From: Octopus sinensis | Lineage: Eukaryota | Assembly: GCF_006345805.1 (NCBI RefSeq) | Contig: NC_043010.1 | Span: forward strand, 50,530,001-50,594,000 | Length of the DNA stretch: 64,000 nucleotides | Direction of reading: 5' to 3' | Part shown: one piece after another, positions 16,046-50,322 of the stretch | Layout: the number at the start of each line of letters is the position of its first letter | Position numbering within the stretch: position 1 is the stretch's first letter | Notes under the pieces: generated by a model | Database searches by the model: none | The model's input: the letters and a program-made list of their open reading frames with translations, nothing else | What the model was told of the DNA's origin: nothing | Translations under genes and position numbers: made by a program

Positions 16046-16418
16046 CTTTTTAAGTTGATATTTGTAAACAAGTATCGCTGTCATACAGATGGTGTCTTTC
16101 GATCCCAATTCTTCCAAAAGGGTATGTTGTGTGACCATGGAGAAATATTTATTATCTTACTTGAAAGTGGTGAAGGGGATTGTGACAGCAAAGAACATCA
16201 GGCCGTAGAAAATCTGCCACTGCAAATTCCATCTACACAAAGTCAGCATGGGAAAATGGACACTAAAACAATAATGGTGGTGGTGGTGGTGGCAATGTAT
16301 TTTTTGAATAAAACATTTCATTTCACATTGCTCCAGTCCACTCAGCTAACAAAAATGGGTAATCCTGTGACCGACCAGTGTCCTGTCCAGGTGGGGAATA
16401 TAAATGCTGCAGCAACTG

Positions 16419-16907
16419 ACATGCATAAGATCTGGTCATCAAATCTAAGTAGAGACTTCAGACTTGAAATCTTCAAAGCCACAGTCGAACCAATTCTACT
16501 ATATGGCTCAGAAACCTGGACGTTATCAAAGAAGCTTGAGAGGCGGTTGGATGGAACCTACACTCGCCTCCTTATGAGAGCTCAAAATCTCTTGTGGAAG
16601 CGCCATCCAACCAAAATGCAAATATATGGGAAACTACCACCTGTGGCATCTCTTGTGAAAAGTAGGAGAGTCCAGTTTGCTGGACATTGTTGTAGAGCTG
16701 AAAAAGAGGTAATTTCTATTCTTCTCCTCTGGAAGCCATCTACTCGCAATGCCAGAGGGCGCACACTCTCCTACCCTGATGTAATCTCCAGGGATACAGG
16801 CATCCAGCAACAGGACCTCCGTAATGCTATGATGGACCGTGAAGTCTGGCATAGCATGGCAAATTCCATTGTCTTGACCACGGTCGAACAATGATGAATG
16901 ATGATGA
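16419..16907 (+). mobile_element. 5'-truncated RTE-clade LINE with open C-terminal ORF and 9-bp TSD
   Basis: FKATVEPILLYGSETWTL...RRVQFAGHC..R motifs; TGA-repeat tail; TSD cagcaactg at 16410-16418 and 16908-16916; inserted in a SINE. Confidence 0.9.
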
Positions 16908-18859: not shown

Positions 18860-20850
18860 TACTTTTGGACCCTTCTGATCCCTATCTAACTCTACAGGAC
18901 CCTCATAGCCATTTGATGTTTAAAAAAGTTTTATTATATTTTTATAATTAACCTTTTAGCATTCAGATTATTCACCTTGTTTTGAATTAATCCTGCATTC
19001 TCTCATAGCGCAGGAGTGGCTTTATGGTAAGTAGCTTGCTTACGAACCACATGGTTCCGGGTTCAGTCCCATTGCGTGGCACCTTGGGCAAGTGTCTTCT
19101 ACTATAGCCTCAGGCTGACCAAAGCCTTGTGAGTAGATTTGGTAGACGGAAACTGAAAGAAGCCCAACATATATACGTGTATATATCTACGTATCATCAT
19201 CATCGTTTAACGTTCGCTTTCCATGCTAGCATGGGTTGGACGATTTGACTGAGGTCTGGTGAACCAGACTCCAATCTGATCTAGCAGAGTTTCTACAGCT
19301 GGATGCCCTTCCTAACGCCAACCACTCCGAGAATGTAGTGGGTGCTTTTACGTGCCACCGGCACGAGGGCCAGATTGGTGGTACTGGCAACGACCACGCT
19401 CAAATGATGCTTTTTATGTGCCACCTGCACAGGAGCCAGTCCAGTGGCACTGGCAACGACCTGGCTCGAATGTTTTGGGGGGAGGGGAGTTGCGTATATA
19501 TATACATATATGTGTGTCTGTGTTTGTCCCCCCCCCCCAACATTGCTTGACAACTAATGCTGGTGTGTTTACGTCCCCATAACTTAGCGGTTCAGCAAAA
19601 GAGACTGATAGAATAGTACTAGGCTTATAAAGAATAAGTCCTGGGGTCGATTTGCTCGCCTAAAGGTGGTGCTCCAGCATGGCCACAGTCAAATGACTGA
19701 AACTGAAACAAGTAAAAGAGAGTAGCTTAGAGATTTTTAAGATGTGGTTACTTATTTTTAGAATAACACTGTCAGAAAAGTGTGAAAGTCTGGATATGGC
19801 CAGGTTGAATATTTGGTCTGGATAGGGCCGGTTTAAATATCATTAAGAATTGCATTTAAAAAATTGTCAAAATATTTTATGTATTCTTCTATTCTTTCAC
19901 TTGTTTCAGTCATTTGACTGTGGCCATGCTGGAACACCACCTTCAAGGGTTTCTGTGAAATATATCAACTCTAGGACATTTTTTTTTTGAGTCTAGTACT
20001 TATTCTATCTATCTCTTTTCCTGATCTGCTAAGTTACAGGGACATAAACACGCCAACACTAGTTGTCAAGCAGTGATGGGAGAACTAATACAGACACAAA
20101 GACACACACACAGATATAAGTAATAGCAGTCACAAAAGTGACAGAGGGGGCTGGTCAGCACCGATTATGCTAAAATAAGAGTTAAATTAACTCTAAAGCC
20201 ACAAAGCACACTGATTTAATGACTGACAAATGGAGTTAAGTCCCTAGCATATGAAGCCATATCGCAATTTTGAATCTTGTTGTTGACACCTTAATTCTCA
20301 TCAGCCAATCATATAAGAAAAACCGTTTAAATTGTAAGCTGATTTTCTAAACAATGTAAGTGTAAATAACTAATTAAGGTGTTAAAAGCCGCTGATGAGA
20401 ATTAAGGTGTCAACACCAAAATAATCTCCCTCCATACAGTGTTTTGTAGCTTTAGAGTTAATTTAACTCTTATTCTGGCATAATCAGTGCTGACCAACAC
20501 CCTCCGTCACTTTTGTGACCTATTAATTTTGCCTTTAGGTTCTAATTGCTAATAAGCCACCCTTTTAATTATATAAATATATATATATATATATACACAC
20601 ATATACGACAGGATTCTTTCAGTTTCTGTCTACTAAATCCACTCACAAGGCTTTGGTCGACCCCAAGCTACAGTAGAAGACACTTTCCCAAGGTGCCATG
20701 CAGTGGGTCTGAACCTGGAACCATGTAGTTGGGAAGCAAGCTTCTTACCACACAGCCACATCTAGAAGTACAACTAATTATTTGCAGATAAATTTTAACA
20801 ACAAAATTTTATATAGACTCCCAATAGACCCTTATTAAGAACCACTGATC
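18860..20850. mobile_element. Nested stack: hAT MITE > piggyBac MITE > SINE-A > RTE tail, plus further SINE/MITE insertions
   Basis: Left hAT-MITE half at about 18865-18945 and right half ending GAACCACTG at about 20847; piggyBac halves at about 18950-19010 and 19722-19846. Confidence 0.6.
20129..20520. mobile_element. MITE with about 85-bp TIRs and an inner inverted repeat
   Basis: GTCACAAAAGTGAC.GAGGG... / ...CCCTCCGTCACTTTTGTGAC; inner pair gttgacaccttaattctcatcagc / gctgatgagaattaaggtgtcaac. Confidence 0.8.
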
Positions 20851-22366: not shown

Positions 22367-23446
22367 TTAGTTCGATTCAGTCAAAGAAAATGACACACTC
22401 TCACTGAATGTGACATGTGGGAAGTCAGCCTCATGTGTTTTTAAATGAGTTCTCAGCCTGCTGTTTGTCATGAACGTTTTCCCGCAAATGTCACAACAAA
22501 AATGTTTGTCATCTATGTGTATGCGATAATGTCTTTTCAAGTGAGCACTGTCACGAAACCCTTTACCACACATCTCACAGTAAAACGATTTCTCCCCCGT
22601 GTGAGTCTTAATATGTCTCCTTAGGTTATCATTACGTATGAAGTTTCTACCACATACGTCACAATGGAATGGTCTCTCTGTGGTGTGAATCTTTAAGTGC
22701 CTGTTTAACTGGCTGTTGGTAATAAAACCTTTCCAGCAGATTTTGCAATAAAAGGGTCTTTCCCCTGTATGGGTCCTGACATGAATTTTCAAATCTTCGT
22801 TTTTCAGAAAATCTTTGCCACAACTTTTACAATGGAAACATTTTATACCTGTGTGTATTCTTCGATGTTTTGACAAGTGACCCTTAGTTGCAAAATCTTT
22901 ATCACATATTTCACAGCTGAATGGCTTTTCCCCTGTGTGCTTTCTATGATGGATTTGTAATTTGCCCTTCGTGTCAAAACAGTGTCCACAGACATCACAA
23001 CTGTATGGTTTTCCTCCAGTATGGGCTTTAGCATGGCGTTTCAAGTTGTTAGCATCAGAAAAGGTTTGGCCACAAAACACACAATCAAATGGTCTCCCAC
23101 CTACGTGTATCTTTCTGTGTAAATTCAGTTTACGACTGTTACTAAACTCATGTCCACAAATTTCACAGCATAATTCTTTGAATTCGTCATGGACTTTTAA
23201 GTGTTGTTTCAAGTGGTTAATATCAGAGAATCTGTAATGGCAAATGTTACACAGGTAGCAGTTAAGTCTCGTATGAGTTACACTATGCTTTCTGATTTTA
23301 TTCTCAGTCAGGTATATTTTACCACATATCTCACAAGGGAACAAGTCTTGGGATTCAGAATTGGTTTGAGTAAAGTCATCATCAGACACATCACTGCATG
23401 AAGGAAGCAGTGTGACATTATTATCAGTGAGGAGCTCCATTTCCAT
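22367..23446 (-). CDS. C2H2 zinc-finger protein, 11 tandem fingers, single coding exon, 359 aa
   Basis: Eleven C-x2-C-x12-H-x3-H repeats with TGEKP-type linkers and a short acidic N-terminus; no KRAB or BTB domain seen. A strong acceptor (ctttatctttccag) at 23550 implies a spliced 5' UTR. Confidence 0.93.
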   Translation of the reverse strand: MEMELLTDNNVTLLPSCSDVSDDDFTQTNSESQDLFPCEICGKIYLTENKIRKHSVTHTRLNCYLCNICHYRFSDINHLKQHLKVHDEFKELCCEICGHEFSNSRKLNLHRKIHVGGRPFDCVFCGQTFSDANNLKRHAKAHTGGKPYSCDVCGHCFDTKGKLQIHHRKHTGEKPFSCEICDKDFATKGHLSKHRRIHTGIKCFHCKSCGKDFLKNEDLKIHVRTHTGERPFYCKICWKGFITNSQLNRHLKIHTTERPFHCDVCGRNFIRNDNLRRHIKTHTGEKSFYCEMCGKGFRDSAHLKRHYRIHIDDKHFCCDICGKTFMTNSRLRTHLKTHEADFPHVTFSESVSFSLTESN

Positions 23447-29409: not shown

Positions 29410-30298
29410 AATAGCACCCTGGTAGATAGAGCAATTAAGGATATGAAGAGAAAGCCCCTAGCCCATCAGGAATCACTGCTGAGATGCTTAAAATATCTGG
29501 CAGTGTGGGTTATGGTCTAGTCACCTGTATAGTAAATCAGAAGTCATACCATAGTCAACTGCTACAAAAGTAAAGGTGGTGTTTTAGATAGAAATAACTA
29601 CAGGGGTATTAAATTACTGGATCAGGTGATGAAAGTCATGAAGAGGGTCATAGCCCAACTAATTAGGGAGAGAGTTAGCCTAGATGAGATGCAGTTTGGC
29701 TTTGTGCCAGGTAGAAGCACCACTGATGCTATATTTCTGGTAAGGCAACTGCAGGAGAAATACCTAACCAAAGATAAACCTCTGTACTTGGCTTTTGTTG
29801 ACTTGAAGAAAGCCTTTGACAGGATTCCCTGATCCCTTATCTGGTGGTCAATGCAGAAACTAGGGATAGACGAGTAGTTGGTAAGAGCTGTACAAGTCCT
29901 GTACAGGGATGCTGTCAGTAAGGTGAAGGTTGGCAATGAGTATAGTGAAGAATTTTGGGTAGAAGTAGGGGTTCACCAAGGATCAGTCCTCAGCCCCCTC
30001 TTGTTCATCATAGTCTTCCAGGCAATAACAGAGGAATTCAAGACAGGCTGCCCCTGGGAGCTCTTCTATGCTGATGACCTTGCTCTGATAGCTGAGTCAC
30101 TACCAGAACTAGAGATGAAGTTTCAAGTGTGGAAGCAAGGTCTAAAATTGAAGGGCTTTAGAGTCAATCTAGCAAAAACCAAAGTCCTAGTAATTAGGAA
30201 GGCAGACAAATCACAAACCCCTTCAAGAAGAAGGCCCTACTTGATTTGTAGAAAAGACATAGGTAGAAACTCCATAAGATGTACCTGGTGTAAGCTGG
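29410..30298 (+). mobile_element. Degenerate RTE (BovB-like) reverse transcriptase fragment
   Basis: QFGFVPGRSTTDAIF, AFVDLKKAFD, GVHQGSVLSPLLF, YADD and VNLAKTK motifs, with in-frame stops. Confidence 0.92.
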
Positions 30299-31714
30299 CA
30301 CTCCCTTTAATATAAACCTCAATACTCACCATCCAAAGCATAACCACTCCATCTATACATTTAAAGTAGATTCATCAACAGACTTACGACCACAAAACAC
30401 ATTTAGATATACTGAGTGGTTACTACTACCACACATAGCCATGTCAGACAAAAAAGGATGCGGTTGAAGCCAGAAATTTGAGCTTACAGAACACAGAAGC
30501 AATATTTATATATCACCTGATGCACATAACACACGGAAATGGTTACATAACCAAATACCTGCAAACCTGGAGAACTACATTGCATGGAAACAATTGTAGT
30601 GATTACAAATAAATGTTCCTTTGCGCTCCTTGTTGACTCCAACTTATTCAATTATATATGTGTGTGTGTTAATGCTATCTATTTATACAAATGTAATTCC
30701 ATGTCCCATTTGAGTTATTTCATGCAAATACCATACCTAAAACTTTCCCTATCTTGGATCTGGAACTTGCATTGAATCGTGAAGCTACATGCATCTGTAC
30801 ATGGGTATATATTTGCCTGTATAGAAATCCCTTGACTAGCGCAGGTGTTACGCTCGAAAACCTCCCACGATAGGTGAAAATCCGTGAAGTAAGAAACGGT
30901 ATTGTACATACAGTATATATTTTTTATCATTTTTATAATTTGTATTCTTTTACTCTTTTACTTGTTTCAGTCATTTGACTGTGGTCATGTTGGAGCACCA
31001 CCTTTAGTCGAGCAAATCGACCCCAGGACTTATTCTTTGTAAGCCTAGTACTTATTCTATCGGTCTCTTTTGCCGATCCGCTAAGTTACAGGGACGTAAA
31101 CACACCAGCATTGGTTGTCAAGCAATGTTTGGGGGGGGGGACAAACACACACATACATATATATATATATAGGCACGTAAAAAGCACCCACTACACTAGC
31201 GGAGTGGTTGGCGTTAGGAAGGGCATCCAGCTGTAGAAACTCTGCCAGATCAGACTGGAGCCTGGTGCAGTCCCTGGCTTCCCAGACCCCGGTCGAACCG
31301 TCCAACCCGTGCTAGCACGGAAAACGGACGTTAAACGATGATGATTTATATATATATACACGATGGGTTTCTTTCAGTTTCTGTCTACCAAATCCACTCA
31401 CAAGGCTTTGGTTGGCCTGAGGCCATAGCAGAAGACACTTGCCCAAGATGCCACGCAGTGGCACTGAACCCGGAACCATGTGGTTCGTAAGCAAGCTACT
31501 TATCACACAGCCACTCCTACGCCATGTATATATTTATTTTACACACAAATGCAAAATAATACCACACATTCGCTCCAAAATTTCATTTTCCATACAGTAT
31601 GTGCAATTCTTTGTTTACTCATCTACAGTACACTATGTATTTTCTTTTAATATATTTTAATTAATATCTTATACAGTGCAGTTCTGTACTGTATTCTTAT
31701 TTATTAATTTTTAG

Positions 31715-32910
31715 GCATGAAAATTTTATTCATCAAAGTAAGTACCATTACGATCAACACATTTTTGCCAGTGAGTTACAAGTTTGTTTATTCTGGTAAA
31801 ATAAAAATCTGGAGTCCTGGAGCTGATGAACTCTTTGAAGACACTTTCAGCATCGGTTTGATTATTGAATTCTTTCTCTCACAGGAAACCATCACAGTGC
31901 TTGAAAAAGTTGTAGTCAGTAGGGGACAGGTCTGGGGAATAAGCTGGATGGGGAAGAACTTTGTAACCAAGTTCCCTCAACTTCTGGAGTGTCATTAGTG
32001 AAACATGTGGTCGAGCAGTCATGAAGAATGATTGGCCCTCTTTTGTTGACCAGTCTGGAATGGAGGAGTAGCAGTTTTTCATTCATTTTGGCAATTTCAT
32101 CACAATATGTTTCTCCAGTAACGGTTTTTCTGGATTTTAAGAAGTTATAGTGGATGAGTCCAGCAGTACACAACCAAACAATCCCCCATAACCTTCTTTT
32201 TGAAGAGCTCGGGTTTAGGGATGGTTTTTGGTGCTTCATTTTGGTCCAACCACTGCAAAGAATGTTTTTTATTATAGTACAGAATCCACTTTTCATCACA
32301 AGTTACAATATAGTCATGAAATTGATTTGTCTGGTTATGGAGAAGAAGCGATGAGCAAATTTCATATCTGCACATTTTCTGATTTTCATTCAAACCGTAT
32401 GGCATCCATTTGTTGAGCTTTTTTGATTTTCCAATTGCATGCAAATGGTTGCAGCAGGCAGTTTTCTGGCTAATTTAAAGTTTTTTTTGCCAGTTCTCAA
32501 ATGGTTTTATGTGGATCTTTCTCAGTGACGGTCTTTAGTTGACTGTCATCGATGACTGATGGGCATCCACTATGCTCAGGTCTCCACTGCAAAATCGTTT
32601 AAACCATTTTTGAGCTGACCACTCACTGGTCATTTCCTCACCAAATATTTTATTGATATCACGAGCAGTTTCAGCTGCTTTACATACTCTTTCGAAGTTG
32701 AATAGCAAAATTGCTTGAATATTGTGCTTTGAATGTTCCATTTCAGATGATTATAAAAATGTTAATTTATTGATGCATTTGGACAAGTCCATGTCTGTAT
32801 TATTAGACAATTGCATAAAAAATGTTTAAAAAAAAAATCAAAACTCTACAAAAATCCGGTACAAATTCTTCATCGTTCAAAACGTTGCTTACTTTTTACT
32901 CAACCTGATA
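31715..32910 (-). mobile_element. Decayed DD34D mariner transposon
   Basis: 5' TIR TATCAGGTTGAGTAAAAAGTAA at 32910; frameshifted KW(V)P, TCDEKW, LHD..ARPH and HPAYSPDLSPTDY motifs; 3' TIR not seen. Confidence 0.9.
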
Positions 32911-33384: not shown

Positions 33385-33621
33385 TCATGCTGAAGCTTCA
33401 CCCAGCAAACGTCTCTGTGCCAGTTCATTATTAGGATTCAACTCAATCAGTTCGTTGCTGGAGACAGCCAAATCTTGAACTGATACACGTCCTCTCTGTT
33501 GCATATACTTTGCTACGGACTGCAATTCATCTCTGGTGATGTAGATGAACTTTCCACGGTCATCCATGACTCCAGTCAAAGTGCCGTCACCAAGGAGACA
33601 CTGCACCCGATCAATTGCTTC
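33385..33621 (-). CDS. DDRGK1: DDRGK1 last coding exon (EAIDRVQ...[17 protein letters not shown]...RGRVSV...GEASA*)
   Basis: Acceptor ttctcag; DDRGK signature; stop at 33385. Confidence 0.97.
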
Positions 33622-36600
33622 CTGAGAAAGAGATCACATTGGACACTTGAAATAGAAACGGTCAACCAATTTTTGAAGAAAGTCGATTTGGGGAAATGAA
33701 GAAACAGAGGAAAGTATGTATGGTATTTCAGTCAATGTGGAGTGAGATTGGGGCTGGAGTAAGGTAATATGACAGTAGTGTAAGATTGTGGTGAGTTGGA
33801 ATGAATTGAATGTGGGTGTGGTTAGGTTGGATGAACCGAGTGTGGAGTTGTAGAAGGGTTGGATGAACTGAGTGTGGGATTGTAATGGAATGGGATGAAG
33901 TGAGTGTAGGATTGGAGTGGTCGTGGTAAAGTTGTATAAAGTGAGTGTAGGATTGGAGTGTGTGGTTGTGGTGAGATTGGACGAAGCTTGAATGGGGTTG
34001 GATGACGTGAGTGAGGGAGGGAGGGACTAGATTGAGGAAGAGTGAAATGAAGGTTTATAATGTTTATAAATCTGCTGTTTAATCTTTGGAAGCAAAAAAC
34101 ATGGTGGCAGCAGTGTCAATTGTAATGTTAATTATTGTGATAATGATGATAGTAATATTCATAGTGAGGGTAGAAAGATCATCATAGAGGTGGTTATATT
34201 GATGATGATGATGATGTAATGAAGAGGTTGGAGCCAGACTTGCTTAATACACAAGGCAGTAATATATTAAGAATCAGAAAGAGCTGTTAACCCTACCTGT
34301 GTTTTTATTGAGAAATGGTGAGCCAAATCTTCCAGCATTACAACTTTGATCTCCTGAAATATGCAATAAAATATTGATTAGTGGCAGGGGAAGAAGTGGG
34401 GAGAGAGGGTTTAGATTTAAGAGTCAGTTTTGTAATAACGAGAAAAGGATAAAAAAAGCAGTCAATTACTGACCCTGGAGAGATGAAAAATACCTCACCC
34501 TGATATCATCTAAAGCAAAGGTTCTCAACCAATTTTTATCTATGGACACCTTTGATTACTATTTTACAGCTATAGTGGACCCACATAGCCATTCAATGTT
34601 TAAAAATTAGTTTTATAGAAACTGCTTTCAAATTTCTTATTTTGTTTTTTGTTTTACATATTAACTTGTGTAGGTTGAACTATGCAAAACATTAGAGAAA
34701 GAAACCCAGCTGTTTCTTGCAAAGCAAAATTTTTCATAGGTTCTTAGAATATTATTGTGGATCCCCAATTTACTATTTTGTTGCGGACCCCACAAGATTT
34801 TATATAGACCATCAGGGGCCACATGGACCCCAGTTGAGAACCCTGATGAGGAGATGAGTCACAGCTATCTTTTGCAGTCAAGCATCCATCATCGATGAGA
34901 TCAAGGAATGTTGAAATCATGTGATCTGGTGGTTTCAGTATTGAAGGTGCAGAGATTTATCTCCCCACCAGCAATATAAACAAGAGTGCATTTTGTACCA
35001 AAAGCCAATATGAGAGTTTCTCTCATGGTATCTACCACAGTATAGCTTGTTCTAATAGAACATCAATGTTTCAGTGGGGATGAGTATTAGCTCTTGGTAT
35101 TAATACTGCCTCTGTCACTAATATATATCTTTTAACAAGCTCACTGGGTAATCGCAACACCAATGCCAGTTCTCGTATTGTTTTTCTATATATTGCTGGT
35201 GCAGAGAGGAGTCCTTGCTATCTCTAGCAGTTCAGCAACCATCACTGACAAGACCAAAGAAGGTGTGGCAGAAACACAGGCACAAAGACACACACATACA
35301 GATATAAATATATATATGCAAGCATGAAAGACAGATGTTAAATGACGATGGTGATGTTGATATACATACATACATATACGGGGGTCTTCTTTCAGTTTCT
35401 GTCTACCAAATCCACTCACAAAACTTAGATTAGCCTAAGGCTATAAAAGGTACTTGCCCAAGATGCCATGCAGTGGGACTGAACCTGGAATCATGTGGTT
35501 CAGAAGCAAGCTTCTTACCACACAGTCACACATTAAATTTAACAACACTCATCATCATCATCATAATCATTTAACATCCATCTTCCATGCATGCATGGAT
35601 AGGATGGTTCACAAGAGCCAGCCAGGTAGGAAAACAACCCTATGCCACTGTGTCTGTTTTAGCAAGGTTTTTACGGCTGGATGCTCTTCCTAACCTAACA
35701 CTATGAGATTAATTTTTTTTTTTTTTAAAGTACTTTCCACATCCCACAATATAACAACTTCTATACCTCTACTCTTCAGACAGTGTTCTGGTTTTCCCAA
35801 AGCTCTACTTACCTTGATGTAATTGATAAATTCTTCCAGCAGAGATTGTGACTGTAAGAAAAGAAGAGAAATATTTAACACCGATTTAACATCTTGGGAC
35901 AAGGCCGGCAAGTTTGGGGGAGGAGGTAAGTCAATTACATTGACCCCAGTGTTCAACTGGTACTTATTTTATCGACCCTAAAGGATGAAAAGCAAAATTG
36001 ACCTCAGTGGAATTTAAACCCAGAATGTAAAGAGGAAAGAAATGCCACTAAGCATTTTGCCTCACAGGCTAACAACTCTGCTAGCTCATCGCCTCAAAAT
36101 CTTATAATAATACTGCTTGTCATTGCATTACTTAGCCCGATGGTAATGCTTTCGTCTGATTAGAGATAAAGTGGTACAAAGAAAAGGAAAGAGAAAAGGA
36201 GGGAGGGAGAGCATCCATGACATGTGGTAGAAGGAATGTTAATTGTAAAGCTTTCACGTAATTAGCTGAAGGAAAAGAGAGAAGGGAGAAAAAGAGGATA
36301 AGACGAAGAATGAGATAGAAAGTGGGAGAAAGATAAAGCCTTTACTTTATTTGATTTCCAATGTGCATTTCTGCTTATTTTTCTTCTTACTTTCCCCTTA
36401 CATTTCCATGTGTAGTTTATATTTTCTTTTTGTAACATATTTCCATTTTATATATATATATTTACTTGGAAATGGATGCATGGCAATCAATTAATAATAA
36501 TAATAATAATATATATATATTTATTTAATCAGCCGAAATTGCGAGGATGATCCGGTTCTTGACTGAAGATTGAAGGCTTCGAATGTCCTGTCCGTGCTTT

Positions 36601-36686: not shown

Positions 36687-39600
36687 GCATATACCGGAAC
36701 AGGACGTCACCAACAGTAAACAACATGAAATACGAAAACAAATGAGTTAAATATGCAAATAACAAGAGAAAAAAAGGACAAGTAATACAAAGGATGACCC
36801 TTCATTAGTAGTCAGCTGTCTATCTACTCTCCATTTTAAGCACGCCATCACAAGAATGCACAGGCAATGGCGCCTGTGAAAAGTGTTGGTAATGGTACCA
36901 TGTAAAAAGCACTGGTGATGGTGCCACATAGAAAGCACAAGTGATGGTGCTACATAAAAAGCACCCAGTACACTCTTTAAAGTGGTTGGTTGCAGGAAGT
37001 GCATCCAGTTGTAGAAACTATGCCAGAACAAACTATGAAGCCTGGTGTGGTCCCATGGCCTTACTAGCTCGTGTCAAACTGCCCAACCCATGCCAGTATG
37101 GAATATGGACATTAAATTATGTGTGTGTGTGTGTGTGTACCCTTGTCTCGACATCATGTGATGGTTGTAAATTAGCATCCCCACCATACAAGTGATGCTG
37201 TTCGTTTCTAGTCTTATGTGAAAAATGTCTGACCATGGAGGTATTTAACTTTGTTTGGAAGCAGGTGAAGGCAGGCAACAGAAAGGGCATCCATAGAAAA
37301 TCTATCTCAACAAATTCTGTCTGATCCATGCAAGCATGGAAAAGTAGACATAAAAATGATAATAACGATGATGATTACACACACATAGACATGAAAAATT
37401 AAAAAGCTTACGTCTAAATCTGTTGCTTTTTCTTCTTCTCCTTCTTCATCTATTGTAAACTCAGCTTTCATCTTCAAATATTCTTCATGTTCTCTTTTCT
37501 GTTCTTCTTCCTTTGCTTTCTGCTGAGCAAGTGCCTGAAAAATAATAAAAATGCTAATGATAATAATGGTTTCAAATTTTGGCACAAGGCTAGCAACTTC
37601 AGGGAAGGCGTTAAGTTCATTAAATTAACCACAGTGTACAACTGGTAACAACAACAATAATGATAATAATGGTTTCAAATTTTGGCACAAGGCTAGCAAC
37701 TTCAGGGAAGGCGTTAAGTTCATTAAATTAACCACAGTGTACAACTGGTAACAACAACAATAATGTTAATAATGGTTTCAAATTTTGGCACAAGGCCAGC
37801 AACTTCAGGGAAGGCGTTAAGTTCATTAAATTAACCACAGTGTACAACTGGTAACAACAATAATAATGATAATAATGGTTTCAAATTTTGGCATAGGGCA
37901 GTAATTTTAGTGGAAGGGGATCAATCAATAACACTGACACAAATTCTTGACTGGTACTTTATTTAATTGACCCTCAAAAAGATGAAAAGCAAAGTTCACC
38001 TTGCCAGCTCAAATGGTTTCCATTTTCAGCACATAACCAGCAATTTTCCAGGGAGGGGTTTAGTTGATGATGTCAGCCCAGTACTTGACTGATATTTAGT
38101 TTACCAACCCCTACAAGAGGATGAAAGGCATTGTTGACCCCAGCTCAAATGGTTTCAATTTTCAGCACATAACCAGCAATTTTCCAGGGAGGGGTTTAGT
38201 TGATGATGTCAGCCCAGTACTTGACTGATATTTAGTTTACCAACCCCTACAAGAGGATGAAAGGCATTGTTGACCCCAGCTCAAATGGTTTCAATTTTCA
38301 GCACATAACCAGCAATTTTCCAGGGAGGGGTTTAGTTGATGATGTCAGCCCAGTACTTGACTGATATTTAGTTTACCAACCCCTACAAGAGGATGAAAGG
38401 CATAGTTTTGATCCCAGTGGAATTTGAACTCAGAACGTAGAGAGCCTGAACAAATACTGCAAGGTATATTTTTCCAATGATCTATGGATTCTGCCGGTTC
38501 ATATCCTTAACAATAATAATTCTTTCTTTCTAATTTTGGCACAAAGCTAGCAATTTTAAAAGAGAAAGTATGTTGATTACTTAATCCCCAGATGCCATGC
38601 AGACAATTTGGTATGGCTGACTGGGCATTCATCTTGTTTTGGCCACTATACTTTTTAGCACTGAAACAAATACACGTGCATACACACACATACGTGTGCA
38701 CAAAAGTATACACATAGATAGAAAGAGTAAGAGAGGTAGGGAAAGACATTACAGTTTATCAAATGAACTTGGTTGATATAAATAATTTCCCTCACCCCCA
38801 AAATATAAAGGGAGATAACTTGCACTCCATCAGTTATGTGACGTGGTCAGTCCTTTGAATTACTTGTTTTTGCCAGCTTAGTAGACTGGAACAACACGAA
38901 ATAAAGCATTTCAATCAAGAACATAACTGCTGGGAACTGAGATCATGACCTTACAATTCTGAGCCTGATACACTAATCACAAAGCCATGTACCGATTGTG
39001 CCACAGGGGCAGCTACTTATGCATACCTTTCCTTCTTGGGACACAAAACTCTGCTTGCGAAGACCTGTTGAGGTAAGTGAAATCAGAATCAAAATTGCTC
39101 AAAAATCAATGGAAATTGTAGTTGTGATACCAGTGCTGGTGGCACGTAAAAGAACCATCCGAACGTGGCCGTTGCCAGCGCAGCCCCGACTGGCCTCCGT
39201 GCCGGTGGCACGTAGAAGTCACCAACTGATTGTGGCCGTTGCCAGCTTCGCCTAGCACGTAAAAAGCACCCACTACACTCATGGAGTGGTTGGCGTTAGG
39301 AAGGGTATCCAGCTGTAGAAACACTGCCAGATCAGACTGGGCCTGGTGCAGCCTCCTGGCATCCCAGACCCCAGTCAAACCGTCCAACCCATGCTAGCAT
39401 GGAAAGCAGACGTTAAACGATGACGATGATGTACCCACACATAGAGAAAATATACTCACACACATAAACAGAGAAGGAACTAGGGAGAGAACGGAAAAAA
39501 ACATTAAAACACCTGATGTCAAATAAGTAGGCATAGAACTGGTGATGCCAAAATGCCTGTGCCAAAACTTCTCCAGGCCTTGTGATCAAACAGCCAGACT

Positions 39601-42345
39601 GTCTTAAAATCTGATAATTTCAGAACATGCCATATCAATATTAATATCCTTTTCTACTCTAGGCACAAAGCCCGAAATTTTATGGGGGGGGGGGCAGTCG
39701 ATTATATTGACCCCAGTATGCAACTGGTACTTAATTTATTGACCCTGAAAGGATGAAAGGCAAAGTTGGCCTCAGCGGATTTTGAACTTAGAACGTAAAG
39801 ACAGACGAAATACTGCTAAGCATTTTACCTGGCATGCTAATGTTTCTGCTAGCTCACCGACTTATATCGATATTAATATAGAAACTTACCATTTCAGCTT
39901 CTTCTCGTTCCCGTTTTTTCTCCTCTTCTTTCTTTTTCGCCTCCTCAGCAGCTAACCGCTCCCTTTTCTCCTCACGTTCTATCTCCATTTGCTGTAAAAA
40001 TGTAAACCATCAATAGAATATAAACCAATATGCCACAGACAGTAAAGCAATTGCAAGAGTTAAATGACTAGATCAAAAAACACAAACTAGTAGGATTAGA
40101 TTGTCAACGGTCATCTCTACTAGCAGACAATTTAACAAGGAGTACACACATCCTTATATACAAATATATATCGTTATTTACATTAGACGGATATTTATCC
40201 TCATCTTGTTCTTAACCCTTTAGTATTTAAACCGGCCATATCCGGCCAAAATAGTTAATCTGTTTTATGTTCAAACAAACCAGATTCAGGCTCTCACACC
40301 TACCCTACAATGTTATTCTACATTAAGTAATTACACCATCAAGATCTTGAAGATATGAGATAATGCATGATTAATTCAAATTAATGGGAATCAATAGGCA
40401 TTATGTTTGATTGAATAATCAGAATACTAAAGGGTTAAATACCCAATTTTTATTTTGCTTTCAGTCCAAACTTTACCTCTCTCATTGCTTTTTTCTCTGC
40501 CTTTTCCTGTAGTTTACGCATCTTCTTGGCACCAATCTTGCCTTCAGGCATGGCAATGTTGTCGAAAATACTTTCTTCATTATCCGAAAAACTTTGTTCC
40601 TCTCCTCTTCCCACATTAACAGGTGCATCATCATCTGCAAGAAAGATTGATTACAATGAGTTAGATTCTAAACATCAAGCTATGCCTTCTATTCTCCACA
40701 ACCTAACAACTACTTTTCTTTTGAATTTTTTCCACTATTTAGTCCAGGAGTTCTCAACTATTTTATTCTGGTGGACCCCACCAGAGCCATTCAATGTTTA
40801 AAAACTAGTTTTATAGAAATGTCTTTCCAAATTCCTATTTTGTTTTTCACACATTAACTTGTGTAAGCTGAACTATATAAAATATTAGAGAAAGAAACTT
40901 AACTGTTTCTTGCAATACATACATCTAAAGTATAATTTTTTTAGGGGCCCTTAAAATACTATTTTGTTGCATGGACCCCAAAAATCTTATTTGGACCCTG
41001 GCTGAAAACCACTGATTTAGTCAGAGAGACAAGGTCGTTGCCTGTGATCCTTTATTCTACATGGCTTCCAAGACAGATAGGAAAGGAGGAAATGATCCTC
41101 AAATCAGAGAGCTAGGCCAAATGCTTGCAACAGAATGAAGGCAATTAAAAGCATCTAAGGACCATGTTGTGGTGTTAAACAGAGTGACGGATACAAGTCT
41201 TCCACCACCCAAGAACTCAAAATACAAAGAGCTCAGACAGCTTCCACATGACATCTCAAACATTCTAACAATCACATCAATCGTCACCAACCATGAAAGG
41301 CAGGATTTGATCTCAGAGTGTAGAGACACAGAACAAAAACAGTATGTCCTTATGTCCGACATTCAGCCACTTTGTTGCAAGAGAGAGAAGAACTGAACTG
41401 ATTTAGGTTCAAGAGTGTTAAAATATTCTTCATAAGATGCAAGCATGGTTATATGGTTAGGAAGCTTGCTTTGCAATCATATGGTTTTGGGTTCAGTCCT
41501 CACTGCAAGGAATCTCAAGCATCTCCTACAAAAGTTACATGTAGGCCAATGCTTTCTGAATGAATTTGGTAAACAGAAACTGAGTGAAAGTCTGTCATAT
41601 AACATACATTTTATATATGCATGTGTGTGTGTGTGTATATATATATATATAGATGAGTGTATTTTACCTTGTTAACAATTAACACGGAAAAAATAAATAA
41701 ATAGTTACCAGGGCAGCAAAAATCTCACAAGTAAAGGTGTTGTAACTCCTTGTTTATAAAGGTAGAAACTTCGTGTTAACGTTGAATATTTTGAATAATA
41801 TATGAATAAATAAATGGAGTTTAATGCAGGTGTAATCAAATATTTTTACTTTCGACACGTTTCGAAAATTCCACTGATACCATCGGTATCTACATATCAA
41901 ATTTGAGCGCAATTGGATGGAGGGTTTCCGAGATCCTAGAAGCCACACACACAGACAGACAGAACTGTTTATATATATATATATACGAGCAAAACGCACC
42001 CTCCCCATGTCCAATGGACGATGCTGAGTTGTCAAACATTTAAACCAAATTTTCTCAAAACAACTTGTCCGGCAGTCCCATAGGCCTCCCCTTTGAGAAA
42101 CACTGATTTAACCTAAATTTGAGACACCAGCAAAAGAAGAAACAAAAATAGACTTTTTTCTATTCAAAAGAAAAACGATTCCCCATGGCTTTATTGATCA
42201 CATTCTCACTTGGAAACGATTTTTGTAATTTTTATAAGACATCTACATGCCCTGAGACCGTCGGTATCTACATATCAGATTTGAGTGCAATCGGATGGAG
42301 GGTTTCCAAGATCCTAGAAGCTGCACACACACACACAGAACTGAT

Positions 42346-45496: not shown

Positions 45497-45801
45497 CTTT
45501 AAATCGTGGCGACACAATTGAGTAGGTCGAAAACTGGAATGGATAAACGGAACGAATGATTATATTTATTGACAAACGAAAAACGGAAATGAATGTTACG
45601 CTCACAATATATTTCACATCATATGGTGATAACCTTATTATATGAATATTTTTAGACTTTATCAACATATGTATAAAATATTTTAAAATATATAAACATT
45701 ATACAGAAATAGTAATATTAGTTTTGGTTATGTTTTACGTTTCTTGGGGTTTCCAAGTTAGATAATTCCTACGACCATCAAGCAAACAAGAACCTCTACG
45801 T
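45497..45801. promoter_or_regulatory. DDRGK1 promoter/5' UTR, candidate bidirectional promoter
   Basis: Repeat-free, CpG-retaining interval between divergent ATGs 528 bp apart. Position-based inference. Confidence 0.55.
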
Positions 45802-47374
45802 CAGTGGTTCTCAACCAATTTTTAATAATGGAACCTTCTGATTACTATTTTATTGTAGTGGAGCCATCTGATGTTTAAAAAACTATCCTCTGTGTGAAAA
45901 GTCTGGCTGCATACACGTTAGCATATGTCAGGTGCATACAACTGACAACACAGTTAATTAAGATTTATTCAGTGAGTTCTATTCAACACATATTTACAAT
46001 CAGCAGAATCATTATTAACTTTAGATGGCTCGCAGGCGAGGTGAACAAATTGGTGAGAGAGATAGACTGGCAATACTTCTACGCTACCAGCAAATTAAAG
46101 ATGGGGTCGCAAATGAAACAGTGAGTGATCTTTGCAATGCCTTTCAAGTAGACCGCAATATACCAGCGCGAATTTATAAAAATGCAACTCTTCATGGAAC
46201 AATACAGCCAAAACAGCGTTCTGGGCGACCAAGCCTTGTCAAAAATGCTGCTTTGCAAGAAAGAATGGTCAATGCTATTCGTGAAAGGCGTACTGCAACC
46301 AGTAGACAACTTGGTAGAGAATTGGGATGCTCTAACAGTACAGCAAACATAATGAGGCATATTCTAAAATTTTGTGCTCAAGGCCGTGTGAGTAGACCTC
46401 CTTTATCTGCCCTAAACATGGAAAAACGTTTGCAGTTTTGTCAGGAACATCCAAATGTTAGACCACATACAGGTTTCTTAGATGAAAAATGGTGGCATAC
46501 ATTTTGGGGTAGCAAGAAGATTTACAGACGGTCAACATCACCGCATATTTATGAACACCCACCATGTCATGTTCCTAAAGCTATGTTTATCGCTGTGATT
46601 AGCAGAGACGTGCCTGGTGGAAAAGTTGGCTTTTGGCCAGTTGCTGAACAAAGACAATACGTACGGAACTCTCGATATCATCAACGCGGTGATCCTTATT
46701 GGAGTGATTCAAGCTGCGATGGTGCTTTTTTCTGCCGTACACTGGATGTTGATATTTTACCAGCCTGTGAAGAACATGGGATCCGCATATTGCAAATGGA
46801 CAATGCGAGACCACATATTGTCAACAATTTGGATGCTTCTATTGCCGAAGTAATGGCTCGTCACCCGACAGTGCAACTTTTATTGCAACCGCCCCAAAGC
46901 TCGGATTTAAATCCATTAGAGGAAGGCATTTTCAAAGTTTTGGTCGATAAAGTTGAACTGAAAAACCCTACAACGCGGCATGAATTGCACGAAGCCGTCT
47001 TGCAGTCTTGGGAAGAGCTATCTGAGCGGAAAATTCGTGGATGTATTCAACATCAAACTCGTGTTCGGCGTCAAATAGTTGACTGTCGTGGGGGTAACAG
47101 ATTCGTGTAATAAATTTTGTGTTTATTTTTGTTTCATAATATATTTTGTTTTTCATATGTGTAGTTTGAGCTATACAAAAATTTGAAAATTAGCTTTTTC
47201 TTGCAATAAATACATCTAAATCTAGACTTTTTCCTTAGCCTTTAAAATAAGACTGTTTACTATTTTGTTTACATGGACCCCAAAAAATCCTGTATGAAAT
47301 AGATAGAGAAGAAAGAAAATCATAGTGATGGTGCCTGGTTTTATTTTCATACGGATCCTGGTTGAGAAGCACTG
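45802..47374 (+). mobile_element. hAT (Charlie-like) MITE shell enclosing the transposase ORF
   Basis: TIRs CAGTGGTTCTCAACCA / TGGTTGAGAAGCACTG match 15/16; 8-bp flanks ctctacgt / ctttatgt. Both halves align to the simple MITE copies at 34516 and 40745. Confidence 0.8.
46025..47110 (+). CDS. Intact IS630/Tc1/mariner-superfamily transposase-like protein, DD39E catalytic spacing, 361 aa
   Basis: N-terminal HTH region with SGRP, then FLDEKWW, KAMFIAVISR, GKVGFWP, QMDNARPH, QPPQSSDLNPLE and a GGN C-terminus. There are 39 residues between the second D and the E. No stops or frameshifts; AATAAA overlaps the stop. Confidence 0.92.
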   Translation: MARRRGEQIGERDRLAILLRYQQIKDGVANETVSDLCNAFQVDRNIPARIYKNATLHGTIQPKQRSGRPSLVKNAALQERMVNAIRERRTATSRQLGRELGCSNSTANIMRHILKFCAQGRVSRPPLSALNMEKRLQFCQEHPNVRPHTGFLDEKWWHTFWGSKKIYRRSTSPHIYEHPPCHVPKAMFIAVISRDVPGGKVGFWPVAEQRQYVRNSRYHQRGDPYWSDSSCDGAFFCRTLDVDILPACEEHGIRILQMDNARPHIVNNLDASIAEVMARHPTVQLLLQPPQSSDLNPLEEGIFKVLVDKVELKNPTTRHELHEAVLQSWEELSERKIRGCIQHQTRVRRQIVDCRGGNRFV

Positions 47375-50322
47375 CTTTATGTGGTCTTTGGATCTGTTAG
47401 AAACAACGACCAAAACTCCTTTAAATGTCACTCCTTATATATATATATATATAATGTGATTCTACTAACTTCTAAGTTCAGTGTTGATCTGGGACAAAAA
47501 CGATTCTGATGTCCAGTTATTTCTTTTACAGGGTTTAGAAAAACTGAAGGACTGCTGCAATAAACGTGTGAACCTGAGAGAGGAATATGTTGAATAAAAT
47601 CATAGTTAACTGATCCTTCTGTATGTTTTTTTTTTTTTTTAACTCAAATCCAGGAACTTTCCAACACCCCTTCATAAAGATATTGTTCACAAAGGAAAAT
47701 TACCAACTAGTTCAGTGCTAGAGATGAAAATAATATATGATTTTAGGTTCTGTCATAGCGGAAAGATCGCTAGCAAATGATTTAGCATACATGTTGATAA
47801 CACCAGTGCCAACATATTTAATGCAGTGAACAAACAAATTTTAATTGAAGGAAATTAGTCACAAGAAAACATTAGTATAATTCAGATTAAAAACCAAAAC
47901 TTCAAGGAGAAACAATTATGGTATGCAAAGTAAAACAAAAATGTTAATTAATTCAGTGGGAAGGTGTTTTATCTTGACAGTATGGTGACAATGATTCTAT
48001 TTTTAATTTCAATGGAGTAAGCTAAATCACCAACCAAATAATTTTATTCTATTGTTTATCTAAAAGATTGTATTTTTAATTTAAATTAAGTATGCTAATC
48101 ACCAACCTCGTCATTTTATTCAATTTTTCAATGAATTTAAATGAACTTCACTGTAATTTTAAATAAAGTATGTCAATACCAATCTAACAATTTTAATTCA
48201 TTTTTAATTTATTTAAATCACGTATGTTAATCACTGACCTTACCATTTGATTTTCAAGCAGAGCATATTGTCAGGTATTTTACCTACGTCTTATCTTAAA
48301 ATTTCCTAGCAGTGCCTTCTGTCTACCAGAACCATTCACAAAGCTTTGGTTGATCTGGGACTATAGTGAAAGACACGTGCCCAAAGTAGTATGCAATGGG
48401 ACTGAACCTGGAACCTTGTGGTTTGGAAACAAACTTCTAAACCACATTTCTTACTAAGAACAATGTGGGAGAAAACTCTGGAATCTAGAAATTGCTTAAG
48501 AATTGAATGGAGATGTAGAGTGGAGAGTGAATCTAATCCCCAGTATGGTAGCAATGGCAGACATGTTTCTGTTTTATTAGATATCTGCAGCAAAGCATAA
48601 TCAAAGAATACAGATTGACTAGAATCAAAGTTTACATTGTTTTTCAAATGTAAAATTCAAATTCAAAGTTCAATTTCCACTGAGGTTGACTTAGCCTTTT
48701 AGCCTTTTGGAATCAATGAAATAAATACCAGTTGCAAATTGGAATTGATATAATCAACTATCCCTTCCCTCAAAATTTCAGACTTTTTGCCTTTAACAGA
48801 AGGGATTAACATTATTGAAAGGATATTGATTAATGTTGATTAGTTTCTACAACTGACATCACCGTGACCGACCAGGTTATCAGATGTTGCTACACATCGC
48901 CGGTCACAATGCGCTTCGCATTGTTTTAGCCTTCAAATGACGCCACCCCGCTGGCTAAGTGAGCAGGCCAACAGAAGAAAGAGTGAGAGAAAGTTGTGGC
49001 GAAAGAGTACAGCAGGGATCGCCACCACCCCCTGCCGAAGCCTTGTGGAGCTTTAGGTGTTTTCGCTCAATAAACACGGTCTGGGAATCAAAACTGCGAT
49101 CCTACAACCGTGAATCCGCTGCCCTAACCACTGGGCCATTGCGCCTCCACAACTGACATAAAATGTATTATTATTAAGGTGACTGCTGGTAGAACTGTTA
49201 GCACGCCAGGCAAAATGCTTAGCAGCATTTCATCTGTCTTTACGTTCTGAGTTCAAATTCCACCGAGGTTGACTTTGCTTTTCATTCTTTTGGGGTTGAT
49301 AAAATAAGTACCAGTTGAGCACTAGGGTTGATGTAACCGACTAGTCCCCTCCCCACAAATTTCAGGCCTTGTGCCTTTAGTAGAAAGGGTTATTATTATT
49401 ATTAACCAGAATTGTTAGCATGCTAGACAAAATGCTTTACTGTATTTTGTTCCATCTCAGTTCAAATCCCGCTGAAGTTGACTTTGCATTTGGGGTTGAT
49501 AAAGTACCAGCTGAACACTGGGGTTAATGTAATCGATTTACCCCTACCCCACCTGAAATTGCTGGTCTTGTGCCAAACTTTGAAACTGCTATTAATATTA
49601 TCATAGCAGTGAGCTGGTAGAACTGTTAGCGCACCAGGCAAAATGTTTAGTGACATTTTGTCTATCTTTACATTCTGAGTTCAAATTCTGTCAAGGCTGA
49701 ATTTGTTTTTCATCCTTTTGGAGTCAATAAAATAAGTACCAGTTGAGCACTGGGGTCAATGAAATGAATATCAGTTGAACATTGAGGCCAATATATATTT
49801 ACACACACACATGCACATATGTATGAGTATGTGTATGTCTTTGTTTGGCCTCCTACCACCCTGTGCTTAACTACAGCTGTTGGTTTGTTTACTTCCCTTT
49901 AACTCAGTGGTTCAGCAGAAAAAAAACCAATAGAATAAGTATCTGACTTTACAAAAAAATAAGCAGTGGAATCAATCTATTTGACTAATAACCCTTCAAA
50001 GTGGTGCTCCAGCATGGCTGTAGTTCAATAACTGAAACGGATAAAAAAATAAAATGATACCTTTCTTCACAAACTGTTTCAAATCATCTGTCCCCTATTC
50101 TGCTATATTTCCCTCCTATCTTTCTTTCTGCAACTTACTTGATCTAATCCACTTCCTCCAAATCATAAACATTAAACCTGTATCTTCTCTTCTCATCACT
50201 GTCACTAGCATTGAAGCTAGAATCACTCACTAAAACACAATCTTATCTTCATCAGAATTGCATTTCTTTAGAAGTTATTTCCTGTCCGAGTATTTTCCTT
50301 CCCTTTCAGCAACTTCATTTTA

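What the first reader, a model, noticed from the sequence alone, without database searches (positions are those of the whole stretch)
45802..47374. Cross-superfamily composite: mariner ORF packaged in a hAT MITE shell
Seen: Charlie-like TIRs (15/16 match) and an 8-bp TSD (ctctacgt / ctttatgt, two C>T changes) enclose the ORF. The left (45802-45888) and right (about 47142-47374) parts align to the two halves of the simple 270-330-bp MITE at 40745 and 34516, with about 30 bp of MITE centre missing. Inference: either a mariner jumped into the MITE and lost both ends, or the hAT MITE captured the ORF and could move it as cargo using a different superfamily's enzyme.
Basis: partly seen in the sequence, partly recalled or inferred. 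Interest (0 to 1): 0.7.

Follow-up and report, generated by a model that had tools for sequence, protein, structure and literature searches.

The report
Transposon nested inside an octopus MITE
A small Tc1/mariner-type jumping gene landed at a TA inside an older hAT-type miniature transposon in an octopus genome and then lost its right end in a roughly 60-bp deletion; this is an ordinary nested insertion with no sign that the pair ever moved together.

Summary
Window 45802-47374 has 16-bp hAT-type terminal inverted repeats (15/16) and an 8-bp target duplication (6/8). Its two arms align collinearly to the simple MITEs at 40745 and 34516, with about 28 bp of MITE centre missing. They enclose an intact 361-aa transposase ORF.

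The ORF belongs to a small IS630-Tc1-mariner element. Relatives from other organisms carry 27-bp repeats of the form CCnCTGTGTnAAAAGTCTGnnTGCAT, flanked by TA. The window keeps a complete left repeat of this type (45886-45912). It sits directly after the TA (45884-45885) that both simple MITEs have at that position.

Only the right end is gone. The break lies in a 6-bp microhomology, TATTTT (47142-47147). The loss covers about 30 bp of element, the TA and 28 bp of MITE.

An Octopus vulgaris copy (96.5% identical) lies at a different locus. It keeps part of the right repeat and has no MITE arm there.

The window copy has private changes at family-invariant residues, including the third catalytic residue (D299E).

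Verdict: a routine nested insertion followed by a deletion. Movement as hAT cargo is conceivable but unsupported. The orthologous site in other species could not be retrieved.

The parts
45794..45801 (.). Left 8-bp target-site duplication of the hAT MITE (ctctacgt)
   Evidence: It matches 47375-47382 at 6/8, chance P about 0.006. It fits the NYYTARRN target pattern reported for SPIN-like hAT elements at 7 of 8 positions, counting the two free N positions (PMC3014272).
45802..45885 (+). Left arm of a SPIN-like hAT MITE. Includes the 16-bp TIR at 45802-45817 and ends with the TA (45884-45885) used as target by the inner element.
   Evidence: 83% identical over 65 bp to MITE_34516 (E=1e-11). Collinear alignment. 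Both uninterrupted MITEs read tttaaaaa(c/t)TAgttttatag at this point.
45886..45912 (+). Complete left terminal inverted repeat of the inner Tc1/mariner-superfamily element (TCCTCTGTGTGAAAAGTCTGGCTGCAT)
   Evidence: Aligns collinearly, and directly after a TA, with the TIRs of relatives L002 (both ends), L003 and L005, at 22/27 identity to each of L002-left and L005-right. Its inverted partner is found after the ORF in the O. vulgaris copy L001 but nowhere in the window.
45913..46024 (+). 5' untranslated leader of the inner element
   Evidence: It lies between the TIR and the ATG. Relatives have 140-175 bp between the element start and the ATG.
46025..47110 (+). Intact 361-aa transposase ORF with triad D153/D259/E299 (spacing 39). 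The third residue is D in all eight relatives that cover it.
   Evidence: ORF. Pfam HTH_Tnp_Tc3_2 31.6 bits and DDE_3 20 bits. Family profile against PDB: SB100X 2.6e-10, Mos1 4e-7, SETMAR 1e-6. Alignment A4. Residue numbering. Private substitutions R161W, P293S, D299E and A307V at family-invariant columns.
47111..47141 (+). Remaining 3' untranslated part of the inner element. The right TIR that should follow is missing.
   Evidence: The window matches O. vulgaris L001 up to this point (L001 9993-10887 = window 46257-47151, 96.5%). L001 then continues with ttcgggtgcagccagacatttctgctctga|TA.
47142..47147 (.). Deletion junction: 6-bp microhomology TATTTT, shared by the element's 3' UTR and the MITE centre
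   Evidence: Three-way comparison of window 47095-47175, L001 10838-10925 and MITE 40795-40860.
47142..47374 (+). Right arm of the hAT MITE, including the TIR at 47359-47374
   Evidence: 70% identical over 163 bp to MITE_40745 positions 92-240 (E=6e-15). Alignments.
47375..47382 (.). Right 8-bp target-site duplication (ctttatgt)
40745..41014 (+). Simple MITE copy of the same family, with a perfect 8-bp TSD atttagtc at 40737-40744 and 41015-41022
34516..34843 (+). Second, older simple MITE copy of the family. Its TSD is no longer recognisable (4/8).

Best explanation
This is a three-step history, not a functional composite.

1. A non-autonomous hAT element of about 300 bp inserted here and made an 8-bp target duplication. 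Its TIR is of the SPIN/Charlie type, CAGTGGTTCTCAACC.

2. Later, an autonomous element of about 1.3 kb from the IS630-Tc1-mariner superfamily integrated into the MITE. This element has a 361-aa transposase, 27-bp TIRs and TA target duplication. It used the TA of the MITE sequence ...tttaaaaacTAgttttatag...

3. A deletion of about 60 bp then removed the element's right TIR (about 30 bp), the duplicated TA and 28 bp of MITE centre. The junction lies in a 6-bp microhomology, TATTTT. The loss is roughly symmetrical around the transposon/flank boundary. That fits a break at the right end repaired by microhomology-mediated joining. Replication slippage is equally possible.

The result is a one-ended inner element that cannot be excised by its own transposase. 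Its ORF is still open because the copy is young, but it carries private changes at invariant residues, including the third catalytic residue (D299E).

Shown: the anatomy, both junctions, the TIR homology and the free-standing relatives. Inferred: the order and mechanism of the deletion, and the inactivity of the protein.
For: - Left junction. TA at 45884-45885 is followed directly by TCCTCTGTGTGAAAAGTCTGGCTGCAT. This aligns with the TA-flanked TIRs of relatives L002, L003 and L005. Both intact MITEs have TA at the homologous site.
- L002 is a complete relative with both TIRs and TA on each side.
- Right junction. No second copy of the TIR core exists in the window. The O. vulgaris copy L001 continues beyond window position 47147 into an inverted copy of the TIR core, then TA. 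TATTTT is shared by the element and the MITE at the break.
- Shell. The joined arms align collinearly to both MITEs with one gap of about 28 bp.
- Independent mobility of the inner element. L001 lies at a non-orthologous locus and has no MITE arm on its 3' side.
- Relative age. The TSD matches 6/8 and the MITE arms are 82-87% identical to other copies. The ORF is 96.7% identical (28/849 differences) to the paralogue.
- Decay. Four window-private changes fall at columns invariant in five relatives, including D299E. dN/dS against L001 is 0.42 from only 28 differences.
- Superfamily. Pfam and PDB profile matches.
Against: - The orthologous site in O. vulgaris or O. bimaculoides could not be retrieved. 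A MITE-only allele was therefore not shown, and the order of events rests on nesting logic and divergence.
- Only one other octopus copy was accessible. It is 5'-truncated, so it says nothing about a MITE arm on its left side.
- The outer 9-10 bp of its right TIR differ from the window's left TIR and lie inside a palindrome. The exact size of the missing piece is therefore approximate.
- Genome-wide copy number, and the presence or absence of further composite copies, were not testable with these tools.
Confidence: 0.87

Rival explanations
1. Cargo mobilisation. After the inner element was trapped, the whole 1.57-kb unit was moved at least once by a hAT transposase acting on the MITE ends. The present 8-bp duplication would then date from that move.
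For: Both hAT TIRs are nearly intact (15/16) and the subterminal MITE sequence is kept on both sides. From general knowledge, hAT transposases can move non-autonomous elements with unrelated internal DNA. The inner element can no longer move by itself because its right TIR is missing.
Against: - No second composite copy was found.
- The only other octopus copy lacks the shell on its 3' side. It cannot derive from the composite, because it keeps TIR sequence that the composite has lost.
- The TSD has 2 mismatches in 8. The ORF differs from a paralogue by only 3.3% in total, so a duplication younger than the inner insertion should be near-perfect.
- Exact look-ups of junction-spanning ORFs found nothing on record.
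Confidence: 0.04
2. Single autonomous element. The whole 1573-bp unit is the autonomous parent of the MITE family, and the simple MITEs are its internal-deletion derivatives. That would mean a Tc1/mariner-like transposase making 8-bp duplications.
For: The MITE centre (atagaaatgtctttcc) shows a faint resemblance to the inner element's TIR core (gtgaaaagtctggctgc), seen.
Against: - Relatives of the ORF are complete elements with their own 27-bp TIRs and TA duplications, and without any MITE-like ends.
- The window has that TIR directly after a TA in the middle of otherwise continuous MITE sequence.
- The O. vulgaris copy ends in its own TIR and not in a MITE arm.
- The resemblance is short, about 10 bp.
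Confidence: 0.01
3. Domesticated gene. The ORF is kept open by selection as a host gene, and the transposon remains around it are incidental.
For: The 361-aa ORF is intact in a repeat-rich region. dN/dS against the O. vulgaris copy is 0.42, below 1.
Against: - The compared copy is a paralogue at another locus, not an orthologue.
- Only 28 differences underlie the ratio.
- The window copy has private changes at four family-invariant residues, including a catalytic one, where the paralogue keeps the conserved residue.
- The family elsewhere has the full anatomy of a mobile element.
Confidence: 0.03

Closest known systems
Nested DNA-transposon insertions (one TIR element inside another), as routinely seen in repeat-rich animal and plant genomes
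   Same: The inner element sits at its own preferred target (TA) inside continuous sequence of the outer element. The outer element keeps its own TIRs and TSD.
   Different: The inner element's ORF is still open, and one of its ends was removed together with adjacent outer-element DNA.
IS630-Tc1-mariner superfamily, families with a DD39D signature (PlantMar / DD39D-GT; PMC7325037, PMC8533490)
   Same: It has a paired-like HTH N-terminus, a DDE/D catalytic domain alignable to SB100X, Mos1 and Hsmar1, 39 residues between the second and third catalytic residues, D at the third position in all relatives, short TIRs, a TA duplication and a length of about 1.3-1.4 kb.
   Different: - The host is a cephalopod.
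- Only about eight close homologues (48-94% identity) turned up among 5.8 billion proteins, none with an informative name: one is called 'hypothetical predicted protein' and the rest have no name.
- PlantMar elements are described as 2-6 kb and plant-restricted (PMC7325037).
- No phylogeny was made, so sharing the spacing does not show common descent. Papers note that equal signatures can arise in unrelated lineages (PMC8533490).
- This particular copy has E at the third position.
SPIN / hAT-N1-type non-autonomous hAT (Charlie-group) elements
   Same: The TIR CAGTGGTTCTCAACC(A) matches the SPIN TIR CAGYGGTTCTCAACCT at 15/16. The 8-bp TSDs resemble the NYYTARRN target consensus listed for these elements in Anolis (PMC3014272).
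   Different: Only the TIR and the TSD pattern were compared. Internal similarity to SPIN and a cognate octopus hAT transposase were not examined.
Pack-MULE / transduplication-type cargo capture by non-autonomous transposons
   Same: Foreign coding DNA lies between the ends of a non-autonomous element.
   Different: The 'cargo' here arrived by its own transposition: the TIR plus TA junction is intact on the left. There is no evidence of amplification of the composite.

Membership tests
IS630-Tc1-mariner superfamily (inner element) | DDE/D catalytic triad in an RNase-H-like domain alignable to known members | tested here: met
   D153, D259 and E299. The family profile hits the SB100X catalytic domain (2.6e-10), Mos1 (4e-7) and SETMAR/Hsmar1 (1.3e-6). 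NPL[D/E] aligns with the third catalytic residue.
IS630-Tc1-mariner superfamily (inner element) | N-terminal paired-like helix-turn-helix DNA-binding domain | tested here: met
   Pfam HTH_Tnp_Tc3_2 scores 31.6 bits (cut-off 31.5) in the window protein. 8 of 10 family members match it.
IS630-Tc1-mariner superfamily (inner element) | Short terminal inverted repeats at both ends | tested here: inconclusive
   The left TIR is present and homologous to the relatives' TIRs. The right TIR is absent from the window. It is present in the O. vulgaris copy and in relatives.
IS630-Tc1-mariner superfamily (inner element) | TA target-site duplication | tested here: inconclusive
   TA directly precedes the left TIR, at the MITE's own TA. 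The right-hand TA was deleted. Relative L002 has TA on both sides.
mariner family sensu stricto (DD34D) | 34 residues between the second and third catalytic residues, D at the third position, and a match to the mariner transposase model | tested here: not met
   The spacing is 39. There is no hit to Pfam Transposase_1 (PF01359), although a decayed true mariner at 31916-32299 in the same window does hit it.
DD39D families (PlantMar / GT) | DD39D signature | tested here: met
   The spacing is 39, and all eight relatives that cover the position have D at the third position. The window copy itself reads DD39E.
DD39D families (PlantMar / GT) | Phylogenetic placement inside the described clade | not tested
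hAT superfamily, non-autonomous (outer element) | 8-bp target-site duplication | tested here: met
   6/8 at the composite (P about 0.006) and 8/8 at MITE_40745.
hAT superfamily, non-autonomous (outer element) | Short TIRs (about 10-25 bp) of the CAG...CTG type and no coding capacity of its own | tested here: met
   16-bp TIR, 15/16. The simple copies are 270-330 bp without ORFs. The TIR equals the SPIN/hAT-N1 type in the literature table.
hAT superfamily, non-autonomous (outer element) | A cognate hAT transposase-encoding element with the same ends in the genome | not testable with these tools
   No octopus genome search is available. None is present in the window.
Transposon-mobilised cargo (composite moving as a unit) | Two or more copies with identical internal junctions at different loci with different TSDs | tested here: inconclusive
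   Not met in the little that could be examined. The only other octopus copy retrieved lacks the shell on its 3' side and retains sequence that the composite has lost. Exact look-ups of junction-spanning ORFs found nothing. A genome-wide search, which is what the feature requires, was not possible.

The most novel reading that the evidence does not exclude
The one-ended but still open transposase gene is stranded between functional-looking hAT ends. It could therefore be carried around only by a SPIN-like hAT transposase, which would make it a transposase gene of one superfamily hitch-hiking on another. Separately, the 361-aa DD39D-type lineage may be an undescribed, sparsely distributed Tc1/mariner family in cephalopods and unidentified marine samples.
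Probability: 0.05. Interest if true: 0.45.

Novelty: new member of a known kind. Interest (0 to 1): 0.15.

Why it matters
It matters little beyond annotation. The locus is a clean worked example of dating by nesting: an old MITE, a young inner element, and a microhomology deletion centred on a transposon end. It also flags a compact Tc1/mariner lineage in Octopus that carries only 'hypothetical protein' labels in public data and still has at least one open reading frame. If composite copies were found elsewhere in the genome, that would document cross-superfamily mobilisation of a transposase gene. That would be of moderate interest to transposon biologists.

Tried and rejected
- I considered whether the MITEs are deletion derivatives of the ORF-bearing unit, because of a resemblance of about 10 bp between the MITE centre and the inner TIR core. 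I rejected this once the relatives L002, L003 and L005 showed free-standing TA-flanked TIRs.
- I tried to find further copies or alleles. The exact look-up of the 361-aa protein found nothing on record, and neither did two ORFs near the right-hand junctions: 46968-47156, which crosses the deletion junction, and 47222-47431, which crosses the right TIR/TSD junction.
- I tried to reach the orthologous O. vulgaris site through the neighbouring DDRGK-domain gene. A homologue search with its last exon returned no octopus protein, so the MITE-only or empty-site comparison could not be made.
- The exact look-up of the neighbouring zinc-finger ORF identified the source record but found no orthologue.
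- dN/dS (0.42) rests on 28 differences to a paralogue and does not discriminate between the explanations.
- The profile search of 1.84 billion representatives showed a large distant superfamily: 493 clusters at E below 1e-30. The ten top clusters I looked up carried no informative name, and all sit on short contigs. It did not help to name the lineage.
- The literature search found no description of this octopus composite.

Full report
**Source and setting**

The window is AT-rich (about 37% GC) and repeat-dense. A 21,080-bp stretch (window 12367-33446) is identical to GenBank record CM016872.1 of assembly GCA_006345805.1. The window is therefore CM016872.1:50,530,001-50,594,000. To my knowledge this is the Octopus sinensis reference; I could not verify the species name with the tools.

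The best protein hit of the ORF is an Octopus vulgaris 'hypothetical predicted protein'. Exons of a DDRGK-domain gene lie on the minus strand at 33388-33633, about 37.4 kb, about 39.9 kb and about 40.5 kb. The feature therefore sits about 5 kb beyond the last recognisable exon, in a 5' intron or upstream of that gene, in the opposite orientation.

**Checking the observation**

- The ends CAGTGGTTCTCAACCA (45802-45817) and, in reverse complement, CAGTGCTTCTCAACCA (47359-47374) match at 15/16.
- The flanking 8-mers ctctacgt and ctttatgt match at 6/8, with two C>T differences. The chance probability at a fixed position is about 0.006.
- The simple element at 40745-41014 has a perfect 8-bp duplication, atttagtc.
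- When 45802-45885 is joined to 47142-47374, the product aligns collinearly with both simple MITEs at 87% and 82% identity. The two simple MITEs are 81% identical to each other. There is a single gap of about 28 bp exactly at the join, MITE_40745 positions 64-91 (BLAST E=1e-11 and 6e-15 for the arms).
- The TIR is the one listed for SPIN and hAT-N1 elements of Anolis (CAGYGGTTCTCAACCT), with target consensus NYYTARRN (PMC3014272). 'Charlie-like' is therefore a fair description of the ends.
- The ORF at 46025-47110 is intact, 361 aa.

**What the ORF is**

Pfam gives HTH_Tnp_Tc3_2 at 31.6 bits, just at the cut-off, and a weak DDE_3 match. A profile of the ORF and its nine homologues hits three solved structures: the Sleeping Beauty catalytic domain (2.6e-10), Mos1 (4e-7) and SETMAR/Hsmar1 (1.3e-6).

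The catalytic residues are D153, D259 and E299, with 39 residues between the last two. All eight relatives that cover the third position have D there. The family is therefore of the DD39D type and is not a mariner sensu stricto. A decayed true mariner elsewhere in the window (31916-32299) hits the mariner model PF01359; this ORF does not.

Close homologues are rare: nine proteins among 5.8 billion clusters, most of them 361-365 aa. Distant relatives are many: 493 representative clusters at E below 1e-30. The ten I looked up had no informative name and sit on short contigs.

**The inner element has its own ends**

The contigs that encode the relatives show a compact element.

- L002 reads TA|CCCGCTGTGTAAAAAGTCTGTGTGCAT ... 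ATGCACACAGACTTCCTACACAGCGGG|TA.
- L003 has the same left end after TA.
- L005 has the corresponding right end.
- L004 begins and ends with a related repeat.

Window 45886-45912, TCCTCTGTGTGAAAAGTCTGGCTGCAT, aligns with these repeats base for base, at 22/27 to L002 and 22/27 to L005. It is preceded by TA at 45884-45885. Both uninterrupted MITEs read tttaaaaa(c/t)TAgttttatag at the homologous place.

The left junction is therefore a textbook Tc1/mariner integration at a TA inside the MITE. The claim that both ends were lost is wrong for this end.

**The right end**

The TIR core occurs only once in the window. The O. vulgaris copy (L001 9993-10887 = window 46257-47151, 96.5% identity) continues after ...cataatatatatttt with ttcgggtgcagccagacatttctgctctga, then TA. 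That is an inverted copy of the TIR core. In the window the same 3' UTR runs straight into MITE sequence.

The hexamer TATTTT (47142-47147) is common to the element's 3' UTR and to the MITE (ttccTATTTTgttttt). The simplest reading is one deletion of about 60 bp. It would have removed about 30 bp of element, the duplicated TA and 28 bp of MITE, with 6 bp of microhomology at the junction.

The loss is about equal on both sides of the former transposon/flank boundary. That is what a break made at that end and repaired by microhomology-mediated joining would leave. Replication slippage would do as well. This step is inference.

**Independent mobility and relative ages**

The flanks of L001 share only dispersed repeats with the window, so it is a different locus. 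Its 3' side has no MITE arm, and its 5' part is cut off by a SINE-like repeat. Because L001 keeps TIR sequence that the window copy has lost, it cannot descend from the composite.

The MITE arms are 13-18% diverged from the other copies, and the TSD has two mismatches in eight. The ORF differs from L001 at 28 of 849 sites. A duplication created after the inner element arrived should be nearly perfect. The 8-bp duplication therefore most likely dates from the original MITE insertion. The numbers are small and one mismatch is at a CpG, so this argument is supportive and not decisive.

**State of the protein**

113 alignment columns are invariant in five full-length relatives. At four of them the window protein has private changes where the O. 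vulgaris copy keeps the conserved residue: R161W, P293S (in the QSPD motif), D299E (catalytic) and A307V. dN/dS against L001 is 0.42, from 11 synonymous and 17 non-synonymous differences. Part of that ratio reflects shared history as an active element.

From my own recollection (not checked here), exchanging the third D for E inactivates mariner Mos1 transposase (Lohe and colleagues, 1997). If that holds here, this copy may be catalytically impaired; this was not tested. With one TIR missing, it cannot be mobilised by its own family's enzyme in any case.

**Rivals**

- Cargo mobilisation by a hAT transposase is mechanistically possible, since both hAT ends are present. It has no positive evidence here and some evidence against it.
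- A single autonomous element with 8-bp duplications is excluded by the internal TA-TIR junction and by the free-standing relatives.
- Domestication is unlikely, given the private changes at invariant sites.

**What could not be done**

No eukaryotic genome search was available. Genome-wide copy counts and the orthologous sites in O. vulgaris and O. bimaculoides remain open. Attempts through exact protein look-ups and through the neighbouring DDRGK gene failed.

**Verdict**

This is a real but ordinary feature: a nested insertion of a DD39D-type Tc1/mariner-superfamily element into a SPIN-like hAT MITE, followed by a microhomology deletion across the right junction. Interest is low. The only mildly notable points are the still-open transposase ORF and the poorly annotated lineage it belongs to.

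Noticed in passing
L001:10905-11065 (O. vulgaris OX597822.1, about 13.63 Mb): A palindrome with 72-nt arms (96% complementary, 17-nt spacer) starts inside the last 11 bp of the inner element's right TIR. It includes the TA and 59 bp of flank, so the transposon end and its flank are duplicated in inverted orientation. This may be a fold-back or template-switch repair product at a transposon end. It also explains why the outer 9-10 bp of that TIR differ from the window's left TIR.
   Followed up: partly
L001:9600-9997: The O. vulgaris copy of the transposase element is 5'-truncated at the equivalent of window 46257. The truncating sequence is an abundant SINE-like repeat (many 80-90% copies in the window), preceded by a (CT)n microsatellite. 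The annotated 281-aa 'hypothetical predicted protein' is this truncated transposase.
   Followed up: partly
window 22367-23446 (-): An intact single-exon 359-aa C2H2 zinc-finger ORF with at least 8 fingers. It is recorded as a called gene in GCA_006345805.1. The exact look-up of this ORF is what identified the source record.
   Followed up: partly
window 31916-32299 (-): A decayed classical mariner transposase fragment (Pfam Transposase_1, 34 bits). It is a different family from the ORF in the finding and served as an internal contrast.
   Followed up: partly
window 33388-33633, about 37400-37520, 39857-40009, 40453-40650 (-): These are exons of a DDRGK-domain (DDRGK1-like) gene. The simple MITE at 40745-41014 lies only about 95 bp from the exon at 40453-40650. 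The first exon was not located, so it is unclear whether the composite is intronic or upstream.
   Followed up: partly
window 1945, 6540, 8579, 13852, 20701, 24299, 31456, 35471 and others: A recurring CAGTGG(G/T)ACTGAACC motif belongs to a very abundant SINE-like repeat, also dense in the O. vulgaris locus. It resembles the hAT TIR at 12-13 of 15 positions and could be mistaken for it in motif scans.
   Followed up: no
window 295-336 and 1124-1165; 18856-18934: Partial copies of the MITE's left arm. The first two are 829 bp apart and identical in their matched stretch, which suggests a local tandem duplication near the window start.
   Followed up: no
L004:1-1595 (Logan SRR25569770): This relative's contig begins and ends exactly with its 30-bp inverted repeats. 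It also contains an extra internal TIR-like motif (atgcacacagac, about 1381) of the type seen at the right ends of L002 and L003. It may be a nested or duplicated end, or an assembly collapsed to the repeat unit.
   Followed up: no
window 29878-30315 (+), 16055-16894 (+), 11607-12011 (-): Retrotransposon remains. Only 29878-30315 has support: its reverse-transcriptase fragment hits RVT_1 at 48 bits. 16055-16894 gave no Pfam hit and 11607-12011 was not scanned, so both are judged LINE-like by eye only. They add to the general repeat load of the region.
   Followed up: no
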